This document shows, in pieces, positions 1-38,666 of a stretch of DNA of 64,000 bases. Where the stretch lies: positions 186,001 to 250,000 of the IMG/VR virus record IMGVR_UViG_3300009158_000031. One strand, written 5' to 3'. The translations under genes were made by a program, and so were the position numbers. The notes under the pieces were generated by a model. The model did no database searches. It had not been told where the DNA came from and saw only the letters and a list, made by a program, of their open reading frames with translations. The first letter of the stretch is position 1; every line of letters starts with the position of its first letter.

Positions 1-957
1 AAGAAATCCGGTGCTGGTTTTGAAATCGATGTTGAAAAACTATCTAGTCAAGAACAAGATGATTTATTAAAATATTTACACTCACAAGATTATTTAGAAG
101 AATCTGTTAATGAAGCTTGGAGTAATATAGACACCGACAAAGCTGCCGATCTAATCAATAAAGAAATTGGAGTTAATCCTGGTTATTTCTTTATTGGCGA
201 TGAAGATTTATGCATCAAATTTGATAAATTATGGACTGAAAAGAAATACAAAGTAGCTCTTAATATGTTATTTTTTATTGAAAATCTAAAAGATCTTAAA
301 GACTTCATAAAACAAAACCAAAACGAATCGGTTAATGAAGCAGTATCACCAGAAGTACATCGTATGGTTAATAAATTTGTAACCGGTATGGCTGATAAAT
401 ATGATTATTCTTTACAAGATGCAGTTTATGCAATACTAGACGTTTTAAAAAGTCAAAAATATAAAGGATTAAAAGAATCTGTTAATGAAGGTGAAACTTT
501 AATATTTGATGAGATCGGAGAAAACCTAACCAAACTTCAGGATCAAATAGATGCAATGCTTAAATGGGAAATCACCGATCAAAAATGGATCGTTGCACTT
601 AAAACAATTCAATCTGCCTGTTCTAAATTGGAAGATACTGTCGCTAAAGCTGATCAGAAATTAGGTGCTATTGAATATAATGAATCCATTAGTGAAGGTC
701 TTTTAAAATTAGATGAAGGTGCTGTTAAACAATTTGAGATCGATTATAAAGACATGGAAAGTAGTATCAAACGAGGTATTGGTTGGATTGATCCTGAATA
801 TGTGGCTGAAACTTGGGAGAATTCTTCAGATACTATTGATTATGAAATAGTTAGAAATGAAATTCTTACTCGTCTAATTAAAGCCGATCTTCTTTATACA
901 TCACTAGATGGAGAAACTAAAGGTAAAAGAATTACCAACATAAGTCAAATTAAATAA
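1..957 (+). CDS. 5'-truncated putative virion polyprotein with repeated ESVNE-like protease sites
   Basis: Frame 1 is open from base 1 (KKSGAGFEID...), so the ORF begins upstream of the window. Repeats EESVNEA, NESVNEA, KESVNEG, NESISEG, LDEG separate short helical modules. Confidence 0.7.
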   Translation, partial: KKSGAGFEIDVEKLSSQEQDDLLKYLHSQDYLEESVNEAWSNIDTDKAADLINKEIGVNPGYFFIGDEDLCIKFDKLWTEKKYKVALNMLFFIENLKDLKDFIKQNQNESVNEAVSPEVHRMVNKFVTGMADKYDYSLQDAVYAILDVLKSQKYKGLKESVNEGETLIFDEIGENLTKLQDQIDAMLKWEITDQKWIVALKTIQSACSKLEDTVAKADQKLGAIEYNESISEGLLKLDEGAVKQFEIDYKDMESSIKRGIGWIDPEYVAETWENSSDTIDYEIVRNEILTRLIKADLLYTSLDGETKGKRITNISQIK

Positions 958-1859
958 TGCTAAAATTTAATCAATTTGTTAACCTGATTCTTAATGAAGG
1001 AGGTAATGCGATTGAGGATGCTCGTCCTATTTTGCAATCTGAAATAGATGCAACGTATGCATATGTTATTAAAAACATATATCCTCTTATTGGTCTTGCC
1101 GAAGATTTTGCTAAACCAATAGGATCTTTTAAGAAAAAAGCACCTGATCAAACATCTGGTGATATCGATATTGCCGTTCTTGCTGATAGAATTGCCGGAG
1201 AAAATGGAATTGATTTATCTCAGGTTCTTGAATTCATCGCATCTAAATTGAGTGATTATTCTCCGGTCGTTAGTAAAGGGTTTCAACAAGTTTCTATAGG
1301 TGTTCCAATTGAAGGTGATAAGAAAAAAGGTATTGCACAAATTGATTTGATGCTAACAGATAATCTGAATTTTTCCTCCTTCATGTATCATTCACCAGAC
1401 TTTACTCAAGCAGAATCCAAATATAAAGGACTTTACCGTAATATTCTACTAATGAATATCATTAGCAATTCGAAACGAGAAACTACCAAGCTAACCGACA
1501 AAGGTGAAATTGAAGAATATCGTTCATATGTACTTCGTCTAAATCAAGGTGTTGTTGCGGTAACCAAATCGTTTATAGGTAAGAAAGGGTTAGTTAAGAA
1601 TCCTACATTACTCAACGATCAAGATAAATTTATGTCTAATACTCCAGAAGTTATTGCGGAATTGGCATTCGGTCCGGATGTTCCCATTTCAGAAATAATG
1701 ACTTTTGAAGATACTTGGAGACATACAATGGATTCTAAATTTATTCACCAAGATAAATTAGATGCAATTCTAAAAGATTTCAGAACTAGATTACTTGCTG
1801 CTAAAGTTCCTTTCCCTATTGAATGTGTAGAACAATACCCAAATATATTTACATCATGA
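957..1859 (+). CDS. Pol-beta-superfamily nucleotidyltransferase with N-terminal capsid-targeting-like tag
   Basis: PIGS...SGDIDIAV and AQIDLM catalytic motifs; N-terminus MLKFNQFVNLILNE|GGNA. Confidence 0.75.
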   Translation: MLKFNQFVNLILNEGGNAIEDARPILQSEIDATYAYVIKNIYPLIGLAEDFAKPIGSFKKKAPDQTSGDIDIAVLADRIAGENGIDLSQVLEFIASKLSDYSPVVSKGFQQVSIGVPIEGDKKKGIAQIDLMLTDNLNFSSFMYHSPDFTQAESKYKGLYRNILLMNIISNSKRETTKLTDKGEIEEYRSYVLRLNQGVVAVTKSFIGKKGLVKNPTLLNDQDKFMSNTPEVIAELAFGPDVPISEIMTFEDTWRHTMDSKFIHQDKLDAILKDFRTRLLAAKVPFPIECVEQYPNIFTS

Positions 1860-3382
1860 TGTTAAAATACAATCAATTCGTTCAATGGTTAAATGAATCA
1901 GCTATGGCTCCAGTTGAATGGAATGAGAAGCCTAAATATCGAGTACAATTTCTTAGTTTCTTAGAAGATAAAAATAAAGAACTTATAATTGATGGTAAAT
2001 ACAAATCCTCATATCCATTTCTAACTTTCAAAGTTTCTGATATTTCTAATTTAGAAGATATACAATCGTTTATAAAAAGTGATAAAGCGGTTTCATCTAA
2101 AGAACCTTTAATGGATGTTGATGCAGTTAAAATACCATTAACACATTTGCTAAAAACTGGATTATTTACTAATCAATCAAAGACTTCAACTGATACCGAT
2201 ACTAAAGAAGGTATGGTTGTTTATTTCTACTACAATCAAGACGCAGACATTCTTTCTATAAAAAATTCAGAAGCAGTTGCATTAGTAGATAACATTCCGA
2301 ATGGAGATTTACATCCAAAAGCTATGGATAAAATTAGATTATGGTTATCTGATTTTGATAGAGAAAATGAAGAACAAATCGCTCAATGGAAATCTACCGG
2401 TAATGTAATGGCTGAATTTTTATCGAATGGATATCATTTAGACCGAAATGATATACTTATAAAAGTTAGAGATAGGGCAAGAATACTTTCTGGTTTAGCA
2501 CCGGATAATTGGTGTCCTGGAGACGTTTACTTAGTAGATCCTTCTGCTAAATCTACCATACTTGATTATGTAAATAATGCAAAAACCATAGGAGAATTAA
2601 ATTTATTATTCAATGATTCATTCACACCAAGAGAAACCTCAGCTGAACCTATGGGATCTCTTGTAGCGGTTTCTCTTAAACAACAAGTAGCTAGATTAGG
2701 TAGAGCAAAAGAATTCCTAAAAACAATATCCACAAAAGATTCAGTATATAACCTTACAAAAGAAGAATTGGTTAAATGTAAAACTGATGAATCTTGGGCA
2801 AAAGCAGAAATTTCTAATTATCAACAACTCTTAGGAACTATCGCTTCTAAATCAGAGATAACCGTTCATTATAACCCTGGAAGTGTAGATCGTATTAAAC
2901 CGGCTTTATTACCTAGTAAATTGGCTGCCATAAAATTAACTTATCATCTACTTACTTTACCAAAAGAATCACCGGAAGATCTTGATGATAATCTTCTAAG
3001 TGTTCTTCAATTTGGACTTAAGCAAGCCGACAAATCAACAAATCCTCCATATTTCAAAATCACCGGAAGTATAAAAGGTGAAGGTAGTTTAGAGTTCTTT
3101 CATGGAGGAGATACTTTAAAGTTATTAATTGGAGGAATTGGTAACAAAGAAGCCAAGCTAGTTATTTTAGATTTACCTAGTAGATTAGATATTGTTCTGT
3201 TTTATTACGTTTCAATTGGCGATACTGCATATGAAATTCGTTTAAGGTCGGCAACTACCAATAGTAAACAAGCCGGATTAGAATTTGAAAGAAAAGATAT
3301 TATCGGAAATCTTGTAGAAGATCCTCAAGGAACAACATCTAAAATAGATAAATTATTCCATCAAAGATCCTCGATGAAATAA
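1856..3382 (+). CDS. Tagged protein with PD-(D/E)XK restriction-endonuclease-like motif
   Basis: Start moved to ATGA overlap at 1856 (MMLKYNQFVQWLNE); DNWCPGDVYLV...VSLKQ motif. Confidence 0.55.
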   Translation: MMLKYNQFVQWLNESAMAPVEWNEKPKYRVQFLSFLEDKNKELIIDGKYKSSYPFLTFKVSDISNLEDIQSFIKSDKAVSSKEPLMDVDAVKIPLTHLLKTGLFTNQSKTSTDTDTKEGMVVYFYYNQDADILSIKNSEAVALVDNIPNGDLHPKAMDKIRLWLSDFDRENEEQIAQWKSTGNVMAEFLSNGYHLDRNDILIKVRDRARILSGLAPDNWCPGDVYLVDPSAKSTILDYVNNAKTIGELNLLFNDSFTPRETSAEPMGSLVAVSLKQQVARLGRAKEFLKTISTKDSVYNLTKEELVKCKTDESWAKAEISNYQQLLGTIASKSEITVHYNPGSVDRIKPALLPSKLAAIKLTYHLLTLPKESPEDLDDNLLSVLQFGLKQADKSTNPPYFKITGSIKGEGSLEFFHGGDTLKLLIGGIGNKEAKLVILDLPSRLDIVLFYYVSIGDTAYEIRLRSATTNSKQAGLEFERKDIIGNLVEDPQGTTSKIDKLFHQRSSMK

Positions 3383-3390
3383 GATAAATA
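3383..3390 (+). promoter_or_regulatory. Putative late promoter GATAAATA
   Basis: GATAAATAACATAA also precedes the endolysin (20911); resembles T4 late consensus TATAAATA. Confidence 0.5.
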
Positions 3391-3412
3391 ACATAACAAA
3401 AACAAACAAAAC

Positions 3413-4000
3413 ATGTATACTAGAGAACAGATAGAAGGAGCCGTAAAGGCTAAAGGATACGTTTGGTTTGAAGGGGAAAAAGATTACGATGTTAATATCG
3501 TGGGAGTTAGAAATTCAGCCACTGGCCAAAAAGTTACTAATGTATTTGATGATACATTAACACTATCCTATAAGATTGCCGGTCAATGGAAATTCCATAC
3601 CTGGATATGTACAACTGACCCTGGTAAAAAGGGTGTTATGGAATATCATAATGCTGCTGGTGTTGCAAGATTAGTCGAAGGACAATATCGTGGATCTCAT
3701 ACTATCAGATTACATCAAGGAAAATATGAAGCTTTAGGGCAAGCTAAAAACGTAAAAGTTTATAGAGATGCTAACCGAGATTTAACTTATAACGAAGATA
3801 AAATTCAAGAAGGAGTTTTTGGAATTAATATTCATAAAGCCGGTGCCGATTCAACATACGTCGAGAATTGGTCAGAAGGTTGCCAAGTATTTAAAAAATC
3901 AGCAGACTTTGAAGAATTTATGACTATAATCAGAAAATCAAGAGATATTCATGGTAATTCTTTTACCTATACTCTAATTGAATCTACTGATATCGCCTAA
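3413..4000 (+). CDS. L,D-transpeptidase (YkuD)-like peptidoglycan-active protein
   Basis: GINIHKAG...WSEGCQV matches H-x-x-G...S-x-G-C catalytic pattern. Confidence 0.6.
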   Translation: MYTREQIEGAVKAKGYVWFEGEKDYDVNIVGVRNSATGQKVTNVFDDTLTLSYKIAGQWKFHTWICTTDPGKKGVMEYHNAAGVARLVEGQYRGSHTIRLHQGKYEALGQAKNVKVYRDANRDLTYNEDKIQEGVFGINIHKAGADSTYVENWSEGCQVFKKSADFEEFMTIIRKSRDIHGNSFTYTLIESTDIA

Positions 4001-4014
4001 CAAATATATACATT

Positions 4015-4449
4015 ATGATACTAAACTACCAAGAATATCTTGCTTTAGAAGAAGCCGCTAAGTACTCAATCGATAAAAATCATTCTCTAATTGCCGTTCA
4101 TGGTCTTTCATTGAGAGATCAAATACACGTTTGGCATTGGCAAACCGAGGTTGGCGATCAACATAAAGCCTTAGGAGAATTTTACGAAAACTTATTAGAA
4201 ACTCTCGATCAATTAGTAGAAGCTATAATGGGAAAATACGGAAGAATTTCTGTTAAGACGGTTGGATCTCCTAAACCTCTTGTTGATCTACAAGATCTAA
4301 AAAACATTGACGCTTTTGTTGATGAATACATAAAACTTTTTGACAATTTCAGAAACACAACTTTCAAAAATGATACAGAAATTCAGAATATCATAGATGA
4401 AATCGTTGCAGAAGCTCTTAAATTGAAATATCTCCTAACAATGTCTTAA
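4015..4449 (+). CDS. Ferritin/Dps-like protein (DUF5856-like) with N-terminal tag
   Basis: HWQT...HKALGEFYE...LVEAIMG...KYLLT; N-terminus MILNYQEYLALEE. Confidence 0.7.
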   Translation: MILNYQEYLALEEAAKYSIDKNHSLIAVHGLSLRDQIHVWHWQTEVGDQHKALGEFYENLLETLDQLVEAIMGKYGRISVKTVGSPKPLVDLQDLKNIDAFVDEYIKLFDNFRNTTFKNDTEIQNIIDEIVAEALKLKYLLTMS

Positions 4450-4466
4450 AAATACTTAATTACAAA

Positions 4467-4850
4467 ATGTTTGTACCAAATCACATTCACGTCCTTATTA
4501 AAGGTTATGTCAAAAATCCACCTCGAACAGAGGAACATCTAAATGATTGGTTTCGACGATTGGTCGAACGTGTAAGAATGGTAGTAGTTGCTGGTCCAAC
4601 TTCTGTATATGTTAATGAACCCGGAAATGAAGGTTTAACTGGAACCGTTACATTAGCAACCTCACATGCATCTATTCATGTATGGGATAACATTGAACCT
4701 GCAATGTTCCAATTCGATCTATATTCATGTTCAGAATTTACTCCACAGGAAGTTATCGAACACTTAGAAGAATTCGATCTAGTTTCATGCGAATATATGT
4801 TCATCGATCGTAATACTGAAATGAAAGTCGTAGAAACTGGAAATGTTTAA
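4467..4850 (+). CDS. speD: S-adenosylmethionine decarboxylase proenzyme-like
   Basis: GLTGTVTLATSHASIHVW...FDLYSC pyruvoyl-enzyme motif. Confidence 0.75.
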   Translation: MFVPNHIHVLIKGYVKNPPRTEEHLNDWFRRLVERVRMVVVAGPTSVYVNEPGNEGLTGTVTLATSHASIHVWDNIEPAMFQFDLYSCSEFTPQEVIEHLEEFDLVSCEYMFIDRNTEMKVVETGNV

Positions 4851-5187
4851 AGCTCTAAAAAATAAATTACACATCATATCATGGGTGTTAACTGATATTG
4901 TCTGGTACTCAGGCAATTCTGATTTAACTCTGATTATGATTATACCTACGTTACTCTTAACCGGATATGCTCTAATAGCACAAAAGGATAAAAGAGAAGA
5001 AAACTTTGTACTTGCCTCATGGGTTCTTGCGAATACTATTTGGTTGTTACATGAAATACGAGATTGGTCTATTCTTCCAGTTTTTCTTTTCATGACGATT
5101 GGAGTCGTATTCTCTTTTCTCACTATGAGATCTTGTTTACATATCCAATGCAAAAAACCAACACCTATAAAAAATGGCAAAGTCTAG
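4843..5187 (+). CDS. Membrane protein
   Basis: Several hydrophobic segments. Confidence 0.6.
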   Translation: MFKALKNKLHIISWVLTDIVWYSGNSDLTLIMIIPTLLLTGYALIAQKDKREENFVLASWVLANTIWLLHEIRDWSILPVFLFMTIGVVFSFLTMRSCLHIQCKKPTPIKNGKV

Positions 5188-5303
5188 TACCAGCGAGGTT
5201 AGAAATTTCCACGCTAAAACTAAAAAGAAAAATCCTGGAGTACATTCGAAGACAAAATCTTCAAGAGCAAAAACTTCTAAGAATTACAGAAAAGCTTATG
5301 TAG
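5064..5303 (+). CDS. Hypothetical basic protein (start probably internal, MQKTN)
   Basis: ORF fills gap before ClpP-like gene. Confidence 0.4.
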   Translation: MVYSSSFSFHDDWSRILFSHYEILFTYPMQKTNTYKKWQSLVPARLEISTLKLKRKILEYIRRQNLQEQKLLRITEKLM

Positions 5304-5322
5304 GACAGGGGAAATAATCCCT

Positions 5323-5850
5323 ATGGCAAAACGTAGAATTCAAAACCGAACCATAATGTTTTTTGGTCAGGTTACAGAAAACAATGTATCTAAAGTCATC
5401 GATCAAATTGATGCCATTTTAGAAGAAGATCCGAATGACAATGGTCCCATCAAAATCATTCTGTCTAGTGAAGGTGGAGATGTGTATGATGGATTTGGCC
5501 TTATAGGTTATATGGAATCTATACCAATAAAATTCCATATTCATTGTGTAGGTAAAATCATGTCAATGGCATTACCAATCGCTCTATCAGGAGATTTAGT
5601 TACTGCATCTCCTTATTGTACTTTCATGTATCATGAAATATCCCATTCCGTACCATATCACGAGAAGATACAATATCACAAACAAGAATTAAAAGAATGT
5701 GACCGTCTACAGAAGATGTACGATGAGTATATAGTTAATCACACCAAGTTCGATAAAGTGTTCCTAGATGATATTAAGGATAAACGAGCAGAGTTCTATT
5801 TTTCACCGAAAGAAGCCATTAAATATGGTGTCATATCTAAAATAGTTTAG
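5323..5850 (+). CDS. clpP: ClpP-like protease
   Basis: LSSEGGDV, IMSMA (catalytic Ser), FMYHE, FSPKEAIKYG motifs. Confidence 0.8.
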   Translation: MAKRRIQNRTIMFFGQVTENNVSKVIDQIDAILEEDPNDNGPIKIILSSEGGDVYDGFGLIGYMESIPIKFHIHCVGKIMSMALPIALSGDLVTASPYCTFMYHEISHSVPYHEKIQYHKQELKECDRLQKMYDEYIVNHTKFDKVFLDDIKDKRAEFYFSPKEAIKYGVISKIV

Positions 5851-5875
5851 ATAGATATTAAAATCAAATTATCAA

Positions 5876-6157
5876 ATGGAAAACAAATCAAATACCGTCT
5901 TTGGAAAACTTAAATGGTTCTTTACCGAACTTATGAAAATGTACAGCAGTGAAAAATCATATTTCTCTAAGAAGAGAGTTGAATCTGGAATTGCTTTTGT
6001 CATATCTCAATGGGGTATGATTTGGTTCTTAATAAAGAAAATCGATGTACTAACTGCATCCGATATGTTAATTTGGGCAGGTATTGAATTTGCCGTTGCT
6101 GGATATATGATTAATCAAATCCAAAAAGAGAAGAAGACCGAAGATACTTCTAATTAA
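5876..6157 (+). CDS. Small two-TM membrane protein (holin-like)
   Basis: FSKKR followed by two hydrophobic helices and a charged C-terminus. Confidence 0.45.
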   Translation: MENKSNTVFGKLKWFFTELMKMYSSEKSYFSKKRVESGIAFVISQWGMIWFLIKKIDVLTASDMLIWAGIEFAVAGYMINQIQKEKKTEDTSN

Positions 6158-31409: not shown

Positions 31410-31787
31410 ATGAAATCAATACCTACATATCACGAATTCCTTAATGAGACCGTCTCATTTAATACCGATACTACTGGTCGTGAAGATTGGGATGATGATC
31501 TAAAGAAACATTCTAGAGATTTTACTCAATCTATAGTAATAATGAGTCCGATGGATTTCTTGAAGAGAGTTCAATATCACCGATTTGAGATTAATAAATC
31601 TAAAGTGGCTAATTATGTTAAAGAATTTCGTGGTAATGTCAAAGGAATTCCAGCACCAACCATGTGGTTCTCTGATAAGTTTCAATACGATAAAGGACTT
31701 GCTCCTGCTTTTCATGATGGATCTCATCGCATGCTAGCTCTACAAGAAGTAGGGATACGAGAAGTTCCGGTTAAAATTATATACTAA
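31410..31787 (+). CDS. ParB/Srx-like domain protein with N-terminal tag
   Basis: MKSIPTYHEFLNE; MSPMDFL...HDGSHRMLALQEVGIREVPV. Confidence 0.7.
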   Translation: MKSIPTYHEFLNETVSFNTDTTGREDWDDDLKKHSRDFTQSIVIMSPMDFLKRVQYHRFEINKSKVANYVKEFRGNVKGIPAPTMWFSDKFQYDKGLAPAFHDGSHRMLALQEVGIREVPVKIIY

Positions 31788-31788
31788 G

Positions 31789-32409
31789 ATGAAAAACATT
31801 CAAACATACGAAAGCTTCTTAAATGAACTTCGACATTCAAAAGAGTTTTTAATAGACCTATTTTCTAAAATGGATATTTTAGATAATGATGTATACAAAA
31901 ACATTTTAATCCATTACATTGAACAACCACAAAATTTAGAAAAACAAGAGTTCATTGATTTAGTTTCATGGTTGATCCAGAATAAAAACAAGTACAGTGA
32001 AGTACTAAAGCCTAAAAATGGATATGCATACAGAGGAACTTCAATAACTCCTGATATGTTTCATAAATTAAAAAATGGATTATCAAAAAAAGAAGGTGGT
32101 ATAAGCATATTTAACTTTCCTTATACCAGCGAATCAGAAGCACAAAGTTGGACATATGATTATAAAGTAGCAATGAGGTTTGCGGATAAAGGTCTTTTAA
32201 ATAACCCTAGATTAGAAAAAGGAGCTAGACCAGCTATTTTAAGAGCTAAGATAGATGATACATTTGTAGGTAATCCTAAGTTGACTGGTCCCATAGCTGA
32301 CCGATTAAGTCTGAAGTCCGAAAAGGAAATATTTCATTTAGGGAATTCTATAAAAGATGCTGAATGGATGATATTCTCAGCCGATATAGAATTAGGAAAA
32401 TTTAATTAG
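31789..32409 (+). CDS. ADP-ribosyltransferase-like protein with N-terminal tag
   Basis: MKNIQTYESFLNE; R-S-E pattern AYRG...QSWTYDYKVAMRFA...SEKEI. Confidence 0.6.
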   Translation: MKNIQTYESFLNELRHSKEFLIDLFSKMDILDNDVYKNILIHYIEQPQNLEKQEFIDLVSWLIQNKNKYSEVLKPKNGYAYRGTSITPDMFHKLKNGLSKKEGGISIFNFPYTSESEAQSWTYDYKVAMRFADKGLLNNPRLEKGARPAILRAKIDDTFVGNPKLTGPIADRLSLKSEKEIFHLGNSIKDAEWMIFSADIELGKFN

Positions 32410-32419
32410 TATAAAGACT

Positions 32420-32818
32420 ATGAAATCAATATCGACATATGATGAATTCTTAAATGAGTCTATTCGTGCAGAAGAGGCTTATCGAGATACAGGAGCTATT
32501 CAAACCGTCATTGATGGAAAGAGAGATATGGGATTCATTACCATCAAATCATCGGTTGATGTGAGCGAAAAAGAATTCTGGACATTGGTGAAGATACACG
32601 ATCTGAGTACCATTCACCTATCTGGAAATGAATATGATGCCTATATCTATTATCATAAAGGAGCCGAGCGAGGTGCCAGAGAGCTAGCGAAGATTGCTAA
32701 CAAATACGGTGGATATCTATCACATGAAGCGACTGAACGAGAATCTCGTCGAATAGGCGAACTTCTAGGTTACGATCGACGAGACATAGATGATTATATA
32801 AAGAAAAACTACAAATAA
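32420..32818 (+). CDS. Tagged hypothetical protein
   Basis: MKSISTYDEFLNE; IGELLGY motif. Confidence 0.65.
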   Translation: MKSISTYDEFLNESIRAEEAYRDTGAIQTVIDGKRDMGFITIKSSVDVSEKEFWTLVKIHDLSTIHLSGNEYDAYIYYHKGAERGARELAKIANKYGGYLSHEATERESRRIGELLGYDRRDIDDYIKKNYK

Positions 32819-32975
32819 TGGATAATGGAAAACGTAATCAATTAAAACCTGTGAGAATCGCTGATGTTAATAAGTTGGTGGCTAATGATCCGAGGATTCT
32901 TATTAAAGTTAATCATAAAGGTGGAAGTGGAGTTTCTCTTATGAACACTAATAAAATTAAAGACCGAAAATAAGA

Positions 32976-33680
32976 ATGAGAAAGATAGCCTTATATGAGC
33001 AATGGATAAATGAAATTGGTGATTCATCAGCCAAGCCATTCAAATGGAGTAGTCCTGTTATCGCTGTTAATATGAAGAGATGGATAGATGATTGTATCGA
33101 AGGAGCTGCAGACAAGAAGATGAGTGGAACTCAAGAAGATATTTACTATAAAACTAAAACATTTAGATATGAATTCCGATCGGATGTGACTAATACAAAT
33201 TATCATGTACACATCGGTGGATTTGTTGGTAGAAATATCTGGATTGCCTTTCAAGGAGAAAAACCTAAAGATTGGGTTGGATATCATATAATTGCCGGAT
33301 TAGGATTTGGTGTTGAAGGAGATTTCGATAAAACTACTAATCTTAATGAACAATTCCGAGTAATGGCAACCGTTACCGAATGTGCCATTGATTTTCTACA
33401 ACGATTCTTGGATGATGGACGAATCAAGATTGATAAATTTCACATGAAACCTAAGGCCGATCACGAAGAACAAAAAGGAATAGATTCTCGTCGAGCTAAA
33501 CTATATGCCCCTTATATTAAAGCCGCATTCCGCAAACTCAAAACGAAGAAGGATTATTACATAGATCAAGAGGCAGATGGATTCGTTCTTCATTTCGGAA
33601 AGGTCATAATGAACTCTCCTTATTCCACTTCAGTATTAGCATCAACCTTTGAAAATGAAGAATCCAATGAAATCAATTAA
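32976..33680 (+). CDS. Tagged hypothetical protein
   Basis: MRKIALYEQWINE; FRVMATV...RRAKLY motif. Confidence 0.65.
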   Translation: MRKIALYEQWINEIGDSSAKPFKWSSPVIAVNMKRWIDDCIEGAADKKMSGTQEDIYYKTKTFRYEFRSDVTNTNYHVHIGGFVGRNIWIAFQGEKPKDWVGYHIIAGLGFGVEGDFDKTTNLNEQFRVMATVTECAIDFLQRFLDDGRIKIDKFHMKPKADHEEQKGIDSRRAKLYAPYIKAAFRKLKTKKDYYIDQEADGFVLHFGKVIMNSPYSTSVLASTFENEESNEIN

Positions 33681-34737
33681 GCTATATGAAGCCTTCTTAA
33701 CAGAAGGAGGCTGGGCAACAACCAAAACACAAGGAACCGTTCTGACTCCAGCTGTTATCGCTGAGGTTGTGAAGGTTATGGATCTGATCAATACGGGATT
33801 CAATGGACATTTGAGAGAGCTTGAACTTCCCACTCTAGATATTCTAAAACCTATTGGCAGTGGAACTTGGTGGAGTGAAGATGTGACCGAACAACCAGAC
33901 AAAACTTATGGAGATGTCGATTACATGGTTGCCTATCCCACTTTGAAGCTCACTGCTGGTCGTGATAGAGAAGATGAGATTGCTACGGTGAAGCTATACA
34001 ATACCGAGCTGCTCATGTGGTTAGAGGAAGAAGGTATCACCGATGTAGATATTGATGAGACGAAGAAAATATCTTCGGATGTTTCTCTTAAGTTAATTGC
34101 GATCGTTCCCTTTAATGGAACTGATGCATATGTTCAGGTTGATATGGTTGTTACTCACAAAGAGTATAGTGATTGGGCAGTATTCCGTATGACTCCTATT
34201 CGTAACGTTAAAGGTTTTGTGCTAGGAAATCTCTACTCTTCATTTGGTGAAGTTCTAGATTTGTCTATTCAGGCAAGAGGAGTAAGAGCTAAATTTGAAG
34301 GTCAGGTTATGAAGCCTTATTCTAAACGAGCTAATGTTGAGGATCGCATCATCTCACAAAATGCTGAATCATTCATGACCGATATCGCTCGTTTCTTTTG
34401 GGAACAGAGCGGAACAGATATTCCATTCACCGCTACTCCTATCGAATCTTGGAAGGGAATGGATCGCAACTCTCCTCGATTCGAAGATCTAGCCGAAGGA
34501 ATTCGTCTGGTTGCCGAGACACTAGGTCAGCTAGACGAATTTGGAACTACTATTAAATACAAATCAGCTGCTGATCTACTAAATGCAGTGATTGCTCAAT
34601 ATACGAAGAAGATGATGGAAGCTTATAATTCTGCTAAATTTGATAAGGCAGAAACTCCAGCAGCAAAAGCCATTATCACTAAAGTTAGAGCAACCATTGA
34701 CGAATATATCAGTCTGGCTAAATCACTACTTACATAA
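33667..34737 (+). CDS. Pol-beta-superfamily nucleotidyltransferase with N-terminal tag
   Basis: Start moved to 33667 (MKSIKLYEAFLTE|GG); KPIGSG...YGDVDY...VQVDMV. Confidence 0.7.
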   Translation: MKSIKLYEAFLTEGGWATTKTQGTVLTPAVIAEVVKVMDLINTGFNGHLRELELPTLDILKPIGSGTWWSEDVTEQPDKTYGDVDYMVAYPTLKLTAGRDREDEIATVKLYNTELLMWLEEEGITDVDIDETKKISSDVSLKLIAIVPFNGTDAYVQVDMVVTHKEYSDWAVFRMTPIRNVKGFVLGNLYSSFGEVLDLSIQARGVRAKFEGQVMKPYSKRANVEDRIISQNAESFMTDIARFFWEQSGTDIPFTATPIESWKGMDRNSPRFEDLAEGIRLVAETLGQLDEFGTTIKYKSAADLLNAVIAQYTKKMMEAYNSAKFDKAETPAAKAIITKVRATIDEYISLAKSLLT

Positions 34738-34744
34738 AAGTAAT

Positions 34745-35119
34745 ATGTTATACTATTCACCAAAAATTGCAGTCGGAGAATCGACTGTAGCAGGCAGAGG
34801 TGTATTTGCCATAGCCGATATAGAGGCTGGAGAGGTACTTGAAGAGTGCCACTTCTTTTTACTAACTAATGGTAATCATTCAGCTATGGATGATACTTTA
34901 AAAGAGATGGTATTCGCATGGCCGGCATATAATGATGTTCATCAATTTGCTGTTGTACTAGGCAGTGGAACTGTTTATAATCATTCATATGAAAACAATG
35001 CAACCTGGGATACTGATGAAGCTAAATGCTGTTTCAGATTTTCTTCTACTCGAGACATAAAGGCCGGTGAAGAGATATTCACAAATTATAACCGAAGCGG
35101 AGGAAATCACTTTGATTGA
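34745..35119 (+). CDS. SET domain protein-lysine methyltransferase
   Basis: GRGVFAIADIEAGE...YNHSYENNA...RDIKAGEEIFTNY; start at 34745. Confidence 0.9.
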   Translation: MLYYSPKIAVGESTVAGRGVFAIADIEAGEVLEECHFFLLTNGNHSAMDDTLKEMVFAWPAYNDVHQFAVVLGSGTVYNHSYENNATWDTDEAKCCFRFSSTRDIKAGEEIFTNYNRSGGNHFD

Positions 35120-35145
35120 TAAATATAAAAACACACAAAAGCTAA

Positions 35146-36063
35146 ATGGCTAATTCAACATACACAGATCTTCAAGTTCTTATTCAACGAATAAGAGGTA
35201 AGCGAGTTCTTCTTCTTACAACATCTAATAGATGGAGTGGTGATGAAGGAGGAAAACCTAAATCTACTCAATTGGCTGAGTTAATAGCCAGATCTTTATA
35301 CGACGATTCAACGGATTCTACTCTTTGTAAAGTAATAGATATTCCATCTCTCAATATTCACAACTGTGAAGGTAATGTATCTTCCGGAAGTGGTAATGGT
35401 TGTGGAGTTAAGGCTGCTGCCCTAAAGGATACCACTAAAAATCCTACTGGTAATCTTCGTTGTTGGGCTTCTATTAATAATGCCGATGATGAGTTATGGA
35501 AAGTTAGTAATGCTATATTCGAATCAGATGTAGTCCTCTTCTTTGCTTCTACAAGATGGGGTCAGGCAAATGCATTCTATCAAAAACTTATCGAACGTCT
35601 AACTTGGTTAGAGAATCGTCACACTACTCTTGGTGAATCTAATCTACTAGGAAATATTGAAGCTGGTGGATTCTTCATTGGACACAATTGGAATGTAGAA
35701 GATGTAATGAATACTCAAAGAACGGTACTTCAGTATTTCGGATTTCAAGTTCCACCTCAACTTTTTCTTCACTGGCAATGGACTAATAGTGATACTAACG
35801 AAACTCAGAAAGGATATGAAGCTGATGCTAAAGACTTCAAAGAGGTTTGGAAAGTTGGAACATATCCTTTAGAGGAAAGTTTTAATCGTTGGTTGAATGA
35901 AGCTGGTTATGATGCTGGTTCTAGAAAACCTACTCCGGAAGAGGTTGAAATGTGCAAATCTCCAGAAGGATTTAATCAGATAAACCACTGCAAAGCTTTA
36001 GGACTTACTCCTCGTGAAGATGGAACCAAAGCCAAATCTAAAAAATATGGTGGTGACGCATAA
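35146..36063 (+). CDS. Flavodoxin-fold NADPH-dependent FMN reductase/Fe-S flavoprotein-like, with C-terminal tagged extension
   Basis: TTSNR, HNCEGNVS, RCWAS, ESDVVLF..STRWG...YQKLIERL; internal EESFNRWLNE. Confidence 0.7.
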   Translation: MANSTYTDLQVLIQRIRGKRVLLLTTSNRWSGDEGGKPKSTQLAELIARSLYDDSTDSTLCKVIDIPSLNIHNCEGNVSSGSGNGCGVKAAALKDTTKNPTGNLRCWASINNADDELWKVSNAIFESDVVLFFASTRWGQANAFYQKLIERLTWLENRHTTLGESNLLGNIEAGGFFIGHNWNVEDVMNTQRTVLQYFGFQVPPQLFLHWQWTNSDTNETQKGYEADAKDFKEVWKVGTYPLEESFNRWLNEAGYDAGSRKPTPEEVEMCKSPEGFNQINHCKALGLTPREDGTKAKSKKYGGDA

Positions 36064-36845
36064 TGAAACCGATAAAACTTTTTGAAGATTTTATTAATGA
36101 ATTCGATACAGGTAAAGTATTACTAGGTGATCCTTCTTTATTGGGTAGACCTAATAAATGGGAAGATCTCGGAATAGAGTTTGAACCTAATACTGCTGAC
36201 AAAACTCAATTAATACAATTGATAAAAGATTGGATTTTTAAAGTAAAGGCAGATCCAAAGATGGGACATATCCTTAAAGAATTGCTGCCCTTAAAAAAGA
36301 AGTTTCCGAAAATATTAGAACCATCTGAAGGTAGATCCGTCTATGAAGGTACTTCTCTTTATAGAGGAACTATAATACCATTTAAAGAAGTGTTATCACT
36401 AAAGGGTAAATGGAAACGTAACGACGCGGTTGATATTTTTGGTGGTAGCCTAAATCTCAGTACATCATATAATTGGGAAAGTATTAATAGAAAGGGATTC
36501 ACTTCGTTTACACCATCTATCGAAATAGCGGCCACTTTTGCAGGAAGCCTTAGTTCAGAAAATTATAACGAAATTGTAGCATCTAAAACGGTTGTTAAAA
36601 GATTATTAGATGGATCCATTGATGGTATGATTCCGATGATTATTAAAATTAAAGACACACATCCCTTAGCAATTATGAATCCGGTGTTTACTCAATCAAT
36701 TCACGAATTCATGAATGAATTTGAGGTATTTGTTGTTGGAAATAAAATCCGGGTTGATGAAGTTATAATTCCAGGATGGCATTACTACGAAAGAGATGCT
36801 AAAGAATTAGGAGTAGATCTTACAAAATATTTTAACATACAATGA
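36063..36845 (+). CDS. ADP-ribosyltransferase-like protein with N-terminal tag
   Basis: MKPIKLFEDFINE; LYRG...FTSFT..IEIAATFA...NEFEV. Confidence 0.55.
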   Translation: MKPIKLFEDFINEFDTGKVLLGDPSLLGRPNKWEDLGIEFEPNTADKTQLIQLIKDWIFKVKADPKMGHILKELLPLKKKFPKILEPSEGRSVYEGTSLYRGTIIPFKEVLSLKGKWKRNDAVDIFGGSLNLSTSYNWESINRKGFTSFTPSIEIAATFAGSLSSENYNEIVASKTVVKRLLDGSIDGMIPMIIKIKDTHPLAIMNPVFTQSIHEFMNEFEVFVVGNKIRVDEVIIPGWHYYERDAKELGVDLTKYFNIQ

Positions 36846-37450
36846 AACATATCCAAGGTTTTAATACATTCCTTAATGAAGGCGAAGGTTTATTTGCTGA
36901 TGCCGGTAAAGGATCTACTAAAGGAATTGGATATGGAACGCCAGAAAAAGCTAAAGAGACTATTAAGATCGCTGACAAAATGAAGGCAGACGATCCAGGA
37001 AAAGCCGTTCAAATCGTTAATGCCATGCTCAATCGAGCTAAATACTCAAATGGTCAGAATGATGGCATGAGAGCAGCAATTCCCATCTTTCAAAAATGGT
37101 TAAAGGCCAATCAAGCATCTGAATCATTTTTAGGAGTTGATGAATTCATTCTAGAAAAACTTTGGCAAAAGGAAGTAGAATCTTCTCACCTTAACGAAAT
37201 TGAATATGACTCATCAACTGAAGAACTAACTATTACTTTTAACAATGGAGACCGCTACAGATATTATGAAGTTCCTAAATCCATCTTCCGAGAATTTGCC
37301 AATGAGAAAACTATTCTAGGAAAGATTGGTGGAGGAATTGTCAAAGGAGCCAAGAAGCTATTTGGTAAGGATATTGACGAAGGTACATATGGTAAAAAAT
37401 TCTGGTCACTCATTCGTCGAGGTGGCTATCAATACGAAAAACTCTCATGA
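36842..37450 (+). CDS. Tagged two-domain protein with C-terminal KTSC domain
   Basis: MKHIQGFNTFLNE; VESSHLNEIEYD....LTITFNNGDRYRYYEVP. Confidence 0.7.
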   Translation: MKHIQGFNTFLNEGEGLFADAGKGSTKGIGYGTPEKAKETIKIADKMKADDPGKAVQIVNAMLNRAKYSNGQNDGMRAAIPIFQKWLKANQASESFLGVDEFILEKLWQKEVESSHLNEIEYDSSTEELTITFNNGDRYRYYEVPKSIFREFANEKTILGKIGGGIVKGAKKLFGKDIDEGTYGKKFWSLIRRGGYQYEKLS

Positions 37451-38112
37451 AAGAAATAAAATTATATGAGCAATGGCTCAATGAAATCGATGGTCCTGCA
37501 GATGGATCTCTATTCGGTACATCCGGAGTAGATTTTGGATTCATCGGTCTGCAAGATCCAGGAGACACACCAAATTCGTTTGAACCTAATATGGTTGAAT
37601 CCTTTATTATTGATCTTCTTCAAAGACACAATAATACCGTTCCTTCTCCTGGCACACTTACCGTCGAGTATCTTGAAGATATCGAAAAGGTACAAACCGG
37701 AATGAGTGATAAAGATCGATCATTTGTTCAGGCAGTTAATAATAATCCTATGGCTTTTCATGTTGAAGATGCCAAGAAAGCTGGTATTGATCTAGATGGT
37801 AAATGGTTAACTGAATGTTGGGATTATGCTACCAGTGTAGCAGGTACTGCAAAAGATATTTGGAAAGTAAAACGTCCATTTGAATTAAGCTCAAAAGTCA
37901 AGGGGTTGGTTCCTACTAAATCCTTCTCATTTCCTTCAACTAATGCGGCCGGATCTTTTTATGTAGCAAAAAAGGTTGCAGAGAAATATCCTCAATTGAA
38001 AGAATCTCAAATGGAAGTGGCTACTCAAATAGCAAATTCACGAGTTGTTGCCGGTGTGCATCATCCATTAGATATTGCCGTTGGAAAAATGTTAGCCTTA
38101 GGCTTATTATAA
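37447..38112 (+). CDS. PAP2/acid phosphatase-family protein with N-terminal tag
   Basis: MKEIKLYEQWLNE; K......RP, PSTN (for PSGH), SRVVAGVHHPLD. Confidence 0.75.
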   Translation: MKEIKLYEQWLNEIDGPADGSLFGTSGVDFGFIGLQDPGDTPNSFEPNMVESFIIDLLQRHNNTVPSPGTLTVEYLEDIEKVQTGMSDKDRSFVQAVNNNPMAFHVEDAKKAGIDLDGKWLTECWDYATSVAGTAKDIWKVKRPFELSSKVKGLVPTKSFSFPSTNAAGSFYVAKKVAEKYPQLKESQMEVATQIANSRVVAGVHHPLDIAVGKMLALGLL

Positions 38113-38666
38113 TGTTCAAGAAATTTAGACAATTCATTAATGAAGATATTCATATACCTTCCGGTAAATGGATAGACACTGACCTTAAAGGTCAGGATGA
38201 TGATATGATGCAACTCATATGGACAATGTATACTGACACATACTCTAAACAAGGATTAGATTTCTCTGCCGATGATTATGCTGAACTTAAAACTAAATAC
38301 CAAGCAACATTCTTAAAGGATGTTGACCATGATCGTATTCCAGATGCCTTTATTATATACAAGAAAACGAAGTATGGAAATAAGATTGCTCTTCTAGGAA
38401 CTAATGATAAGAAGACTGCAAAACGAGATCTTCTAGAAAAAACTATTTCATTACTTAAAAATCCTGGTTGGTTGTTAGAGGCCTCTCGTAAAATGGAAGA
38501 GATTCTTTCAAATTCAAATGTTCCTTATATTGAAGATCCTGAAATCATTGCTGATATTGTCGGTAAAGACAAGAAACCTGAAATGGTTAAACATGGATAT
38601 TATACAAGACTTCTTTCAAAAACACCAAAGCGTATCTTAAAACGCATGTATGGTAAGGTCAAATAG
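38112..38666 (+). CDS. Tagged hypothetical protein
   Basis: MFKKFRQFINE. Confidence 0.65.
   Translation: MFKKFRQFINEDIHIPSGKWIDTDLKGQDDDMMQLIWTMYTDTYSKQGLDFSADDYAELKTKYQATFLKDVDHDRIPDAFIIYKKTKYGNKIALLGTNDKKTAKRDLLEKTISLLKNPGWLLEASRKMEEILSNSNVPYIEDPEIIADIVGKDKKPEMVKHGYYTRLLSKTPKRILKRMYGKVK

What the first reader, a model, noticed from the sequence alone, without database searches (positions are those of the whole stretch)
957..4449. First cluster of capsid-targeting-tagged cargo genes
Seen: 957 MLKFNQFVNLILNE, 1856 MMLKYNQFVQWLNE and 4015 MILNYQEYLALEE share the [YF]-x-x-[FWY]...L-x-E tag found in the 31-38 kb cluster, on a nucleotidyltransferase, a nuclease-like protein and a ferritin-like protein. 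Inference: the tagging system spans separate loci, so the tag is a portable address rather than a local duplication.
Basis: partly seen in the sequence, partly recalled or inferred. Interest (0 to 1): 0.6.

Follow-up and report, generated by a model that had tools for sequence, protein, structure and literature searches.

The report
T4-style capsid-targeting tags on cargo genes
Three genes here begin with a short peptide that closely resembles the phage T4 signal for loading proteins into the virus head, and about 45 unrelated genes of this uncultured 254-kb lake phage carry it, which suggests an unusually large set of proteins delivered along with the DNA.

Summary
The three N-termini at 957, 1856 and 4015 are as described. 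Genome-wide, 40 of 344 crude gene calls match the tag pattern, against 0.26 expected from shuffled N-termini. With two corrected starts and three near-variants that makes about 45 genes in 11 loci.

The tag has the anatomy of the T4 capsid targeting sequence (CTS). It is 10-17 residues long, with two aromatic residues three apart, then an aliphatic residue, one more residue, and Glu. These are the positions that determine targeting and processing in T4 IPIII.

The genome encodes T4-type portal, gp21-family prohead protease (fused to a coiled-coil scaffold) and gp23-type capsid protein. The capsid protein and scaffold carry the same aliphatic-Asn-Glu sites.

Mature parts of 43 tagged proteins fall into 41 BLAST families. 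Distant kin of two of the three cargoes start untagged, for the nucleotidyltransferase exactly at the predicted cleavage point. Tag codons vary synonymously.

Cargo identities:
- 957: Pol-beta/PolX-like nucleotidyltransferase (supported).
- 1856: restriction-endonuclease-like (weak).
- 4015: DUF5856, four-helix and ferritin/Dps-like (family supported).

Packaging and cleavage are inferred, not shown. This is a known mechanism in a new lineage, at unusual scale.

The parts
1..957 (+). C-terminal 318 aa of a 507-aa tagged modular polyprotein. Its true start, with a canonical tag, lies 566 nt upstream of the window. It has four internal Glu-Ser-Val-Asn-Glu sites followed by Ala or Gly, plus one Ser-Ile-Ser-Glu|Gly site.
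   Evidence: It has the highest density of the aliphatic-Asn-Glu-small motif in the genome: 5 sites, against 4 in the protease-scaffold. A 93%-identical relative has a 315-aa version with the same end modules and different middle modules.
957..998 (+). 14-residue tag of the nucleotidyltransferase (extended variant). The aromatic pair is followed by one extra helical turn before Leu-Asn-Glu.
   Evidence: In about 100 homologues the N-terminus keeps the aromatic pair and a final x-Glu, while the conserved domain starts right after it at Gly-Gly-Asn-Ala. The region has low pLDDT and a short helix at residues 4-9 in the model.
957..1859 (+). Pol-beta superfamily nucleotidyltransferase, closest in fold to the palm-thumb of family X DNA polymerases.
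   Evidence: AlphaFold model with pLDDT 90. Foldseek gives Pol beta at E 2e-5. VIA-align gives Z 8.8-9.4 to PolX enzymes, including the ASFV minimal PolX, and all 50 rows are NTases. G56, S57, D69, D71 and D130 are invariant. No Pfam hit.
1856..1897 (+). 14-residue tag of the 508-aa protein. It fits the canonical heptad Phe-x-x-Trp-Leu-Asn-Glu.
   Evidence: Homologues start at this Met and often carry a second x-Leu-Tyr/Phe-Glu site before the conserved Ser-Ala-Met start of the domain.
1856..3382 (+). 508-aa viral protein of unknown family, possibly a PD-(D/E)xK restriction-endonuclease-like core followed by a C-terminal beta-sheet domain.
   Evidence: Model pLDDT 83. No Foldseek PDB hit. VIA-align gives Z 4.3 to HinP1I and 4.0 to MspI over residues 105-480. 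The nearest named Atlas clusters are HpaII and HaeIII endonucleases at 0.87 and 0.85, which count as leads only. E118, D223, S273 and K275 are invariant.
3413..4000 (+). Untagged 195-aa gene inside the cluster, cell-wall-hydrolase-like. It is not part of the tag system.
   Evidence: phrog_3000 at E 4e-35 and an endolysin PHROG at 3e-12. DNA similarity to Bacteroides and crAss-like phage genes. Its N-terminus does not match the tag.
4015..4053 (+). 13-residue divergent tag of the DUF5856 protein, ending Leu-Glu-Glu instead of Leu-Asn-Glu.
   Evidence: The two closest relatives have the canonical Tyr-x-x-Phe-Leu-Asn-Glu joined to the same Ala-Ala-Lys-Tyr mature start.
4015..4449 (+). DUF5856 four-helix (ferritin/Dps-like) protein.
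   Evidence: Pfam DUF5856 at E 2.6e-16 over residues 41-141, and phrog_858 at 4.7e-18. Weak similarity to Dps-family NapA in the PDB, E 0.18-0.21.
31410..38666 (+). Second array, with nine genes carrying the canonical tag, interrupted by untagged genes that include a SET-domain protein.

Best explanation
The tags are capsid targeting sequences of the T4 type.

**Proposed mechanism.** Each tagged protein is made with a 10-17-residue N-terminal propeptide. Its two aromatic residues, three positions apart on a short helix, bind the scaffolding core of the assembling prohead. The prohead protease is a gp21-family serine protease, here fused to the coiled-coil scaffold. It then cuts after the Glu of the aliphatic-Asn-Glu motif. 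That releases the mature protein inside the head, from where it can leave with the DNA at infection.

**The genes in 957-4449.** They encode three such cargoes: a PolX-like nucleotidyltransferase, a possibly restriction-endonuclease-like protein, and a DUF5856 ferritin-like protein. They sit in a six-gene tagged operon-like cluster, one of 11 such loci in a freshwater jumbo phage with T4-type head genes.

**Shown:** the motif, its extreme N-terminal position, its statistics, its presence on unrelated proteins, its absence from distant homologues, the protease, and matching sites in capsid protein and scaffold.

**Inferred:** binding to the core, cleavage, retention in the head and ejection.
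For: 1. **Match to the T4 CTS.** T4 IPII and IPIII begin with a 10-residue CTS and IPI with a longer one. According to the review PMC9026906, targeting depends on residues 4 and 7 and processing on residues 8 and 10, and gp21 cuts after L/I-x-E. The tag here has aromatic residues at the equivalent of 4 and 7, an aliphatic residue at 8 and Glu at 10. P3 is L/I/V/M in 45 of 45 tags, P2 is Asn in 37 of 45, and P1' is Ala/Ser/Gly in 31 of 45.
2. **T4-type head genes.** Peptidase_S77, Gp23 and Portal_T4 are all above the Pfam cut-offs. The capsid protein starts with a 6-residue peptide ending Ile-Asn-Glu|Ser. The protease-scaffold has four aliphatic-Asn-Glu-small sites.
3. **The conservation boundary falls at the Glu.** This holds in all three cargo families. 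Untagged distant homologues of the nucleotidyltransferase start exactly there, and untagged DUF5856 kin also lack the tag.
4. **Unrelated cargo.** 41 unrelated families among 43 tagged proteins.
5. **Selection acts on the peptide.** Tag codons vary synonymously at roughly genomic frequencies, and upstream DNA is not conserved.
6. **Related uncultured phages.** They carry the same system at high density, up to 14 of 36 genes in 20 kb.
7. **Phage PAU.** It has an analogous Met-Lys-Thr-Leu-x-x-Leu-Tyr-Glu tag on at least 15 genes around its head module. These include two that its GenBank record calls internal capsid protein, and the scaffolding protein.
8. **Structure models.** AlphaFold models show the tags as short, low-confidence helices detached from the folded domains.
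Against: - There is no virion proteome, no N-terminal sequencing and no cultured host, so nothing here shows cleavage or packaging.
- The three tags of this cluster are the less canonical ones: two have extra residues before the cleavage motif, and one ends Leu-Glu-Glu.
- Forty-five cargoes, several of 300-500 aa and with housekeeping-like enzyme folds (ATP-grasp, cytidylyltransferase-like, glycosyltransferase), are far more than in T4. Some tags may be vestigial or serve only to bring proteins transiently to the assembly site.
- A loose late-promoter-like motif is not enriched before tagged genes: 13 of 40 tagged, against 87 of 334 overall.
- The head-gene regions of the nearest cultured or long relatives examined, pT24 and LR756500, show no canonical tags.
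Confidence: 0.75

Rival explanations
1. The shared N-termini are footprints of recombination or gene-shuffling cassettes, or a translation-initiation element acting at the DNA/RNA level. They have no role as a protein address.
For: - Tagged genes sit in tandem arrays with very short or overlapping gene junctions.
- Arrays differ in gene content between relatives that are 93% identical.
- Tags within one phage are slightly more alike than between phages in some lineages: L007 is 0.57 within, against 0.36-0.50 between.
Against: - Conserved positions use synonymous codons freely (Phe TTT/TTC, Leu with four codons, Ile/Val/Leu interchange).
- The 40 nt upstream of the start share no sequence.
- What is kept is an amino-acid pattern with a fixed distance to Glu.
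- The pattern persists in homologues at 45-60% identity, while the tag's own sequence drifts.
- For the window's genome, within-phage tag identity (0.46) is no higher than between-phage identity.
Confidence: 0.05
2. The tags are propeptides recognised by the head protease or scaffold, but most tagged proteins are assembly accessories or scaffold-like core fillers. They would be degraded or expelled during maturation, not delivered as cargo.
For: [quoted passage not shown]
- The 507-aa protein ending at window 957 has five internal sites and would be cut into pieces of 50-150 residues.
- PAU's scaffolding protein carries the tag.
- Many tagged proteins are small (63-130 aa mature) with no recognisable domain.
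Against: - The three cargoes of this finding are folded, conserved domains with a single N-terminal site.
- The nucleotidyltransferase has an invariant catalytic Gly-Ser/Asp-x-Asp/Asp set, which points to an enzyme kept intact.
- T4 Alt and the IPs, which have the same kind of propeptide, stay in the head and are ejected.
Confidence: 0.15
3. The tag is a different kind of signal: a degron for the phage ClpP-like protease at window 5323-5850, or a localisation signal to the membrane or another compartment.
For: A ClpP-family gene lies 900 nt downstream of the cluster. It matches Pfam CLP_protease at E 6e-20, and also PHROG head-maturation-protease families.
Against: - The tag is amphipathic and acidic at its end. 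It has no hydrophobic span or lipobox, unlike the genuine signal peptides seen on other genes of this genome.
- It ends in the same motif as the capsid protein's N-terminal peptide and the scaffold sites.
- It matches the T4 CTS residue for residue at the functional positions.
- The gp21-family protease sits in the canonical place between portal and capsid genes.
Confidence: 0.04

Closest known systems
Phage T4 capsid targeting sequence (CTS) of internal proteins IPI, IPII, IPIII and Alt, removed by prohead protease gp21 (Mullaney and Black 1996, as reviewed in PMC9026906 and PMC5694885)
   Same: - N-terminal 10-20-residue propeptide.
- Aromatic residues at the equivalents of T4 positions 4 and 7, aliphatic at 8, Glu at 10, cut after Glu.
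- A gp21-family protease, a gp20-type portal and a gp23-type capsid protein in the genome.
- The tag is shared by otherwise unrelated proteins, and arrays turn over between relatives.
   Different: - About 45 tagged genes (13% of gene calls), against a handful in T4.
- The consensus is longer (mode 13 residues, with a conserved Ile/Leu four residues before the first aromatic), and P2 is almost always Asn.
- Many cargoes are large, enzyme-like proteins rather than small basic proteins. Median pI of mature parts is 5.8, the same as the rest of the proteome.
- The protease is fused to the scaffold.
- Some cargoes have two successive sites, and one is a multi-site polyprotein.
- The phage is only distantly related to T4: the gp23 match is at Pfam level, and the best cultured relatives are at 33-35% identity.
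Sphingomonas phage PAU head-module genes with a shared N-terminus (GenBank JQ362498: gp142 and gp154 'internal capsid protein', gp152 'scaffolding')
   Same: - Capsid protein 33% identical to this phage's.
- At least 15 genes around portal, protease and capsid genes start with one shared short peptide ending aromatic-Glu, often followed by Lys-Leu-Asn-Glu.
- The capsid protein has a Lys-Leu-Asn-Glu|Ser site.
   Different: - The PAU tag is Leu-x-x-Leu-Tyr-Glu rather than aromatic-x-x-Phe-Leu-Asn-Glu.
- Within the one 41-kb stretch of PAU examined here, the tagged genes lie around the head genes. Here they occupy 11 loci over 220 kb.
- I found no paper in the library describing the PAU tags, only the record's annotation.
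Long N-terminal propeptides of ejection and inner-body proteins of phiKZ-like giant phages (phiKZ, 201phi2-1, SPN3US)
   Same: A gp21-related protease cuts after Glu at a three-residue motif. Propeptides are thought to target proteins into the prohead, and they contain redundant multiple sites.
   Different: Those propeptides are mostly more than 100 residues long and are not a short shared tag. Their motif is Ser/Ala-x-Glu, and those phages lack a T4-type scaffold.

Membership tests
T4-type CTS / internal-protein system | A gp21-family (Peptidase S77) prohead protease is encoded by the same genome | tested here: met
   PF03420 at 50.7 and 49.1 bits, against a cut-off of 27. It is the N-terminal domain of a 633-aa protein lying between portal and capsid genes.
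T4-type CTS / internal-protein system | T4-type portal (gp20) and major capsid protein (gp23) | tested here: met
   Portal_T4 at E 5e-71 and Gp23 at E 4e-36.
T4-type CTS / internal-protein system | N-terminal propeptide of 10-20 residues ending in aliphatic-x-Glu | tested here: met
   Tag lengths are 10-17 with a mode of 13. P3 is L/I/V/M in 45 of 45. All three tags of the finding fit.
T4-type CTS / internal-protein system | Targeting determinants: aromatic residues three apart, equivalent to T4 IPIII residues 4 and 7 | tested here: met
   T4 IPII, IPIII and IPI N-termini were read from NC_000866. The roles of the residues come from PMC9026906. The pattern is present in all tags.
T4-type CTS / internal-protein system | The same tag on otherwise unrelated proteins | tested here: met
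   41 BLAST families among 43 mature parts. Untagged homologues exist for two of the three cargoes.
T4-type CTS / internal-protein system | The tag is necessary and sufficient for incorporation into proheads, and is cleaved off by the protease | not testable with these tools
   This needs virion proteomics or reporter fusions. One complex prediction gave no verdict (see Tried and rejected).
Pol-beta superfamily nucleotidyltransferase (gene 957-1859) | NTase fold with helix, Gly-Ser, then Asp-x-Asp, then a third Asp on the next strands | tested here: met
   Z 8.8-9.4 to family X polymerases, and all 50 listed matches are NTases. Foldseek E 2e-5. G56, S57, D69, D71 and D130 are invariant in 34 sequences.
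Pol-beta superfamily nucleotidyltransferase (gene 957-1859) | Match to a curated Pfam NTase model | tested here: not met
   No Pfam family at E <= 0.01. A neighbouring Atlas cluster has PF01909 in 33% of its members.
PD-(D/E)xK restriction-endonuclease-like (gene 1856-3382) | Restriction-endonuclease-like alpha/beta core with a catalytic acidic residue and an x-Lys motif | tested here: inconclusive
   VIA Z 4.3 (HinP1I) and 4.0 (MspI), below the level the tool calls reliable. Atlas feature scores of 0.87 and 0.85 to HpaII and HaeIII clusters are leads only. No Foldseek, Pfam or PDB sequence hit. Invariant E118, D223 and S273-x-K275 are compatible.
DUF5856 / ferritin-like four-helix proteins (gene 4015-4449) | Match to Pfam DUF5856 above its gathering score | tested here: met
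   60.9 bits against a cut-off of 34.6, over residues 41-141. phrog_858 at E 4.7e-18.
DUF5856 / ferritin-like four-helix proteins (gene 4015-4449) | Ferritin/Dps di-iron or ferroxidase ligands | not tested
   Only weak sequence similarity to Dps-family NapA, E 0.18-0.21. No model was made and no ligand check was done.

The most novel reading that the evidence does not exclude
A lineage of freshwater and marine jumbo phages with T4-type heads uses the CTS principle on an industrial scale.

- More than a tenth of the genes (about 45 here; up to 14 of 36 genes in 20 kb of a relative) encode head-targeted cargo. The cargo includes a PolX-like nucleotidyltransferase, a restriction-endonuclease-like protein, an NMNAT-like cytidylyltransferase, an ATP-grasp ligase, a PAP2 phosphatase and a ferritin-like protein.
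- There are also multi-module polyproteins that the head protease would cut into separate small proteins.
- The virion would then inject a whole enzymatic take-over kit.
- The cargo arrays would be a fast-evolving arsenal that can be read straight from sequence, by tag.
Probability: 0.4. Interest if true: 0.7.

Novelty: new member of a known kind. Interest (0 to 1): 0.5.

Why it matters
If the tags work as in T4, the proteins this phage lineage loads into its head, and probably injects, can be listed from sequence alone. That is rare for uncultured viruses.

The list is much longer and more enzyme-rich than in T4. It points to candidate early-acting effectors, such as a PolX-like transferase, a possible endonuclease and a ferritin-like protein, that act before any phage gene is expressed.

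It also supplies a natural series of tag variants and double-site or polyprotein designs. These would be useful to anyone who uses CTS fusions to package foreign proteins in phage heads.

The mechanism itself is not new.

Tried and rejected
- **Complex prediction.** I ran the protease-scaffold (633 aa) with the DUF5856 protein. It gave no verdict (score 0.00, controls not run) and is not evidence either way.
- **Structure and sequence searches for the 508-aa protein.** Foldseek against the PDB found nothing at E <= 0.001. Sequence and profile searches of the PDB for the 957 and 1856 proteins found only chance-level hits.
- **Late-promoter test.** A loose ATATAA-type motif precedes 13 of 40 tagged genes against 87 of 334 genes overall, so it is not enriched. 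The stricter ATATATAA motif precedes the protease-scaffold, several tail-type genes and 7-9 tagged genes. That is suggestive only, and none lies in front of the genes of this finding.
- **Lineage-specific homogenisation of tags** (co-evolution with a receptor). Within-phage identity exceeds between-phage identity in some relatives (L007, L011, L019) but not in the window's genome, so this is inconclusive.
- It was redone from the stored files.
- **Relatives without tags.** The head-module regions of Tenacibaculum phage pT24 and of the closest long relative, LR756500, show no canonical tags. The system is therefore not universal in the wider clade.
- **Charge of mature parts.** Tagged mature proteins are not more basic than the rest of the proteome, unlike T4 IPs.
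- **RNA evidence.** Metatranscriptome contigs from lakes cover parts of the region. DNA carry-over cannot be excluded, and contigs say nothing about timing.
- **Not used.** The large profile search (search of protein representatives) was not needed.

Full report
**What the window is.**
- The window is bases 186001-250000 of a single 254,393-bp virus record (IMG/VR, about 83% complete, 32-39% G+C across 2-kb windows).
- Nearly all genes are on one strand.
- The genome encodes a T4-type portal, a gp21-family prohead protease and a gp23-type major capsid protein, all above Pfam cut-offs.
- The protease is the N-terminal domain of a 633-aa protein. The rest of that protein is a long helical, scaffold-like region.
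- The capsid protein's nearest relatives are an uncultured 462-kb phage (55% identity), Lak megaphages (39% over 81%), Tenacibaculum phage pT24, Sphingomonas phage PAU and Chryseobacterium phages (32-35%).
- DNA of this region is found in freshwater and lake metagenomes.

**Checking the observation.**
- The 1856 start is the second ATG of its ORF. Homologues begin there, so it is the real start.
- The 31-38 kb cluster holds nine genes with a very regular tag.
- A crude gene call of the whole genome (344 genes) shows the same N-terminus again and again.
- 40 genes match a strict or extended pattern. Shuffled N-termini give a mean of 0.26 and a maximum of 3 in 1000 shuffles. Only 5 of 1474 internal Met contexts match.
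- Two of those five are the second Met of a double-Met start. Two are mis-called starts, one of them the ORF that fills window 1-957.
- With three near-variants the count is about 45 genes in 11 loci. Tag length is 10-17 residues with a mode of 13.
- The cluster of this finding really runs from 3.1 kb upstream of the window to 4449 and holds six tagged genes.

**Anatomy of the tag.**
- Anchored on the final Glu, the consensus is Met-Lys-x-Ile-x-Thr-[Phe/Tyr]-x-x-Phe-[Leu/Ile/Val]-Asn-Glu.
- The residue three before the cut is aliphatic in 45 of 45 tags. The one before Glu is Asn in 37 of 45. The residue after Glu is Ala, Ser or Gly in 31 of 45.
- The tags at 957 and 4015 are extended or divergent versions. 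In the 957 tag one more helical turn separates the aromatic pair from Leu-Asn-Glu. The 4015 tag ends Leu-Glu-Glu.
- The 1856 tag contains a canonical heptad (Phe-x-x-Trp-Leu-Asn-Glu).

**Protein-level or DNA-level conservation?** The conserved positions use synonymous codons at roughly genomic frequencies, Leu/Ile/Val interchange freely, and the 40 nt upstream of the start codons share no sequence. Selection therefore acts on the peptide.

**Comparison with T4.**
- I read the N-termini of T4 ipII, ipIII and ipI from NC_000866.
- IPII and IPIII start with the known 10-residue CTS. IPI starts with a related, longer one.
- According to the review PMC9026906, amber-suppression experiments placed targeting at residues 4 and 7 and processing at residues 8 and 10. 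gp21 cuts after Glu at L/I-x-E.
- In T4 those four positions are Tyr, Phe, Ile and Glu. In the present tags the equivalent positions are aromatic, aromatic, aliphatic and Glu.
- One gene of this genome (at 63300) starts almost exactly like T4 IPI.
- The same cleavage motif occurs where it should if the head protease uses it. The capsid protein begins with a 6-residue peptide ending Ile-Asn-Glu followed by Ser. The closest relative's capsid protein has the same arrangement. The protease-scaffold has four such sites.

**Portability.**
- After removal of the tags, 43 tagged proteins fall into 41 BLAST families.
- Most have no Pfam domain. Those that do are diverse: RimK-type ATP-grasp with a zinc-protease-like tail, DUF5824, glycosyltransferase 2, cytidylyltransferase-like, PAP2, KTSC and DUF5856.
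- The three cargo families of this finding were followed into other genomes.
  - *Nucleotidyltransferase.* It has more than 200 metagenomic homologues. Nearly all keep an aromatic-x-x-Phe-Val start and a final x-Glu, while length and sequence between them drift. Many have two successive sites, and some have a 100-residue insert after the first site. The conserved domain always begins right after the last Glu, at Gly-Gly-Asn-Ala.
  - *Nucleotidyltransferase, untagged kin.* Distant homologues in Lak-A1 and in Sinorhizobium phage Phosso have no tag and start with Met directly at that point.
  - *508-aa protein.* Its homologues show the same picture, often with a second Leu-Tyr/Phe-Glu site before a conserved Ser-Ala-Met start.
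  - *DUF5856 protein.* It has two close relatives with a canonical tag joined to the same mature start. Dozens of distant phage homologues of about 120 aa have no tag.

The tag is thus a separable module placed in front of otherwise independent proteins.

**Relatives.**
- Twenty-kilobase loci from related uncultured phages carry 3-14 tagged genes each.
- A 93%-identical relative has two extra small tagged genes in this very cluster, and a different tagged gene after the 508-aa gene. This kind of turnover is described for T4 IP loci.
- Phage PAU has an analogous but differently spelled tag on at least 15 genes around its head module. These include two genes its GenBank record calls internal capsid protein, and its scaffolding protein.
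- The head regions of pT24 and of LR756500 show no canonical tags.

**The cargoes.**
- *Gene 957-1859.* It folds with high confidence (pLDDT 90; the tag itself is low-confidence with a short helix) into a Pol-beta-type nucleotidyltransferase. The eight best matches are family X DNA polymerases, including the minimal ASFV enzyme (Z 8.8-9.4), and every listed match is a nucleotidyltransferase. The Gly-Ser, Asp-x-Asp and third Asp are invariant. A second tagged protein, at 33667-34734, shares the Gly-Ser/Asp-x-Asp region.
- *Gene 1856-3382.* It models at pLDDT 83 but has no clear structural neighbour. Two weak and independent leads point to MspI/HinP1I/HpaII-type restriction endonucleases, and the invariant Glu, Asp and Ser-x-Lys are compatible. 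I rate 'nuclease-like' as possible, not shown.
- *Gene 4015-4449.* It is a DUF5856 protein with faint similarity to Dps-family proteins.
- *Gene 3413-4000.* It is untagged and looks like a cell-wall hydrolase.

**The upstream neighbour.**
- The ORF ending at 957 starts with a canonical tag 566 nt before the window.
- It contains four internal Glu-Ser-Val-Asn-Glu sites followed by Ala or Gly, and a fifth related site. That is the highest density in the genome.
- A close relative has a 315-aa version with the same first and last modules and different middle modules, each bounded by the same site.
- It looks like a string of small modules meant to be cut apart by the head protease.

**Mechanism and confidence.** The best explanation is a T4-type capsid targeting system (confidence 0.75). 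The aromatic pair docks the protein on the scaffolding core. The gp21-like protease then cuts after Glu, and the mature protein stays in the head and may be ejected.
- Shown: the sequence anatomy, statistics, portability, and the presence of the protease and of matching sites in head proteins.
- Inferred: docking, cleavage, retention and ejection.

**Main rival.** Many tagged proteins may be transient core components rather than delivered cargo (0.15). DNA-level cassette or other-signal explanations fit poorly (0.05 or less each).

**Novelty.**
- The mechanism is textbook T4.
- New here is the lineage (freshwater jumbo phages related to PAU, pT24 and Lak phages), the scale (about 13% of genes), the enzyme-like cargo, and the double-site and polyprotein designs.
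- I found no paper in the searchable library that describes this. The PAU GenBank annotation shows that its annotators recognised internal capsid proteins there.

Noticed in passing
window 1-957 (gene starts 566 nt upstream of the window; genome 185434-186957): Tagged 507-aa protein with four internal Glu-Ser-Val-Asn-Glu|Ala/Gly sites plus one related site. A 93%-identical relative has a 315-aa version with the same end modules and different middle modules. It looks like a modular polyprotein cut by the head protease.
   Followed up: partly
window 3413-4000: Untagged 195-aa gene inside the tagged cluster. It matches phrog_3000 and an endolysin PHROG, and has 67-73% DNA similarity to genes of Bacteroides and crAss-like phages. 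By eye it has a His...Ser-x-Gly-Cys motif like YkuD-type L,D-transpeptidase folds.
   Followed up: partly
window 4467-4850 and 5323-5850: An S-adenosylmethionine decarboxylase-like gene and a ClpP-family protease gene lie just downstream of the cluster. The ClpP-like protein also matches PHROG head-maturation-protease families, although the genome has a canonical gp21-type protease elsewhere.
   Followed up: no
whole genome, upstream regions (for example genome 101656, 128883, 5068): There are three promoter-like motif classes. ATATATAA lies about 25 nt before the protease-scaffold, tail-type genes and some tagged genes. CATATAA[A/T] lies before replication-type genes. TTATTCCACAAA lies about 50 nt before 16 genes, including window 3413.
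   Followed up: partly
window 34745-35119: An untagged SET-domain (lysine methyltransferase-like) protein sits inside the 31-38 kb tagged array.
   Followed up: no
genome 109121-110626 (outside the window, just after the head module): A tagged 501-aa protein has a RimK-type ATP-grasp domain (E 2e-34) and a C-terminal match to the 'putative ATP-dependent zinc protease' family.
   Followed up: no
genome 133186-137603 (outside the window): This is the densest array: ten consecutive tagged genes of 76-276 aa, the first four with nearly identical 14-residue tags.
   Followed up: no
window 1-5900: Contigs from four lake metatranscriptome libraries cover parts of the region. One run has pieces identical to the window at 267-417, 1308-1463, 2486-2636 and 4056-4264, and the others hold 90-99% relatives. 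In relatives a separate tagged gene start appears at window position 107.
   Followed up: partly
L119 (Sphingomonas phage PAU, record 100-121 kb): At least 15 PAU genes around portal, protease, scaffold and capsid genes share the N-terminus Met-Lys-Thr-Leu-x-x-Leu-Tyr/Phe-Glu, often followed by Lys-Leu-Asn-Glu. Two are annotated internal capsid protein and one scaffolding.
   Followed up: partly
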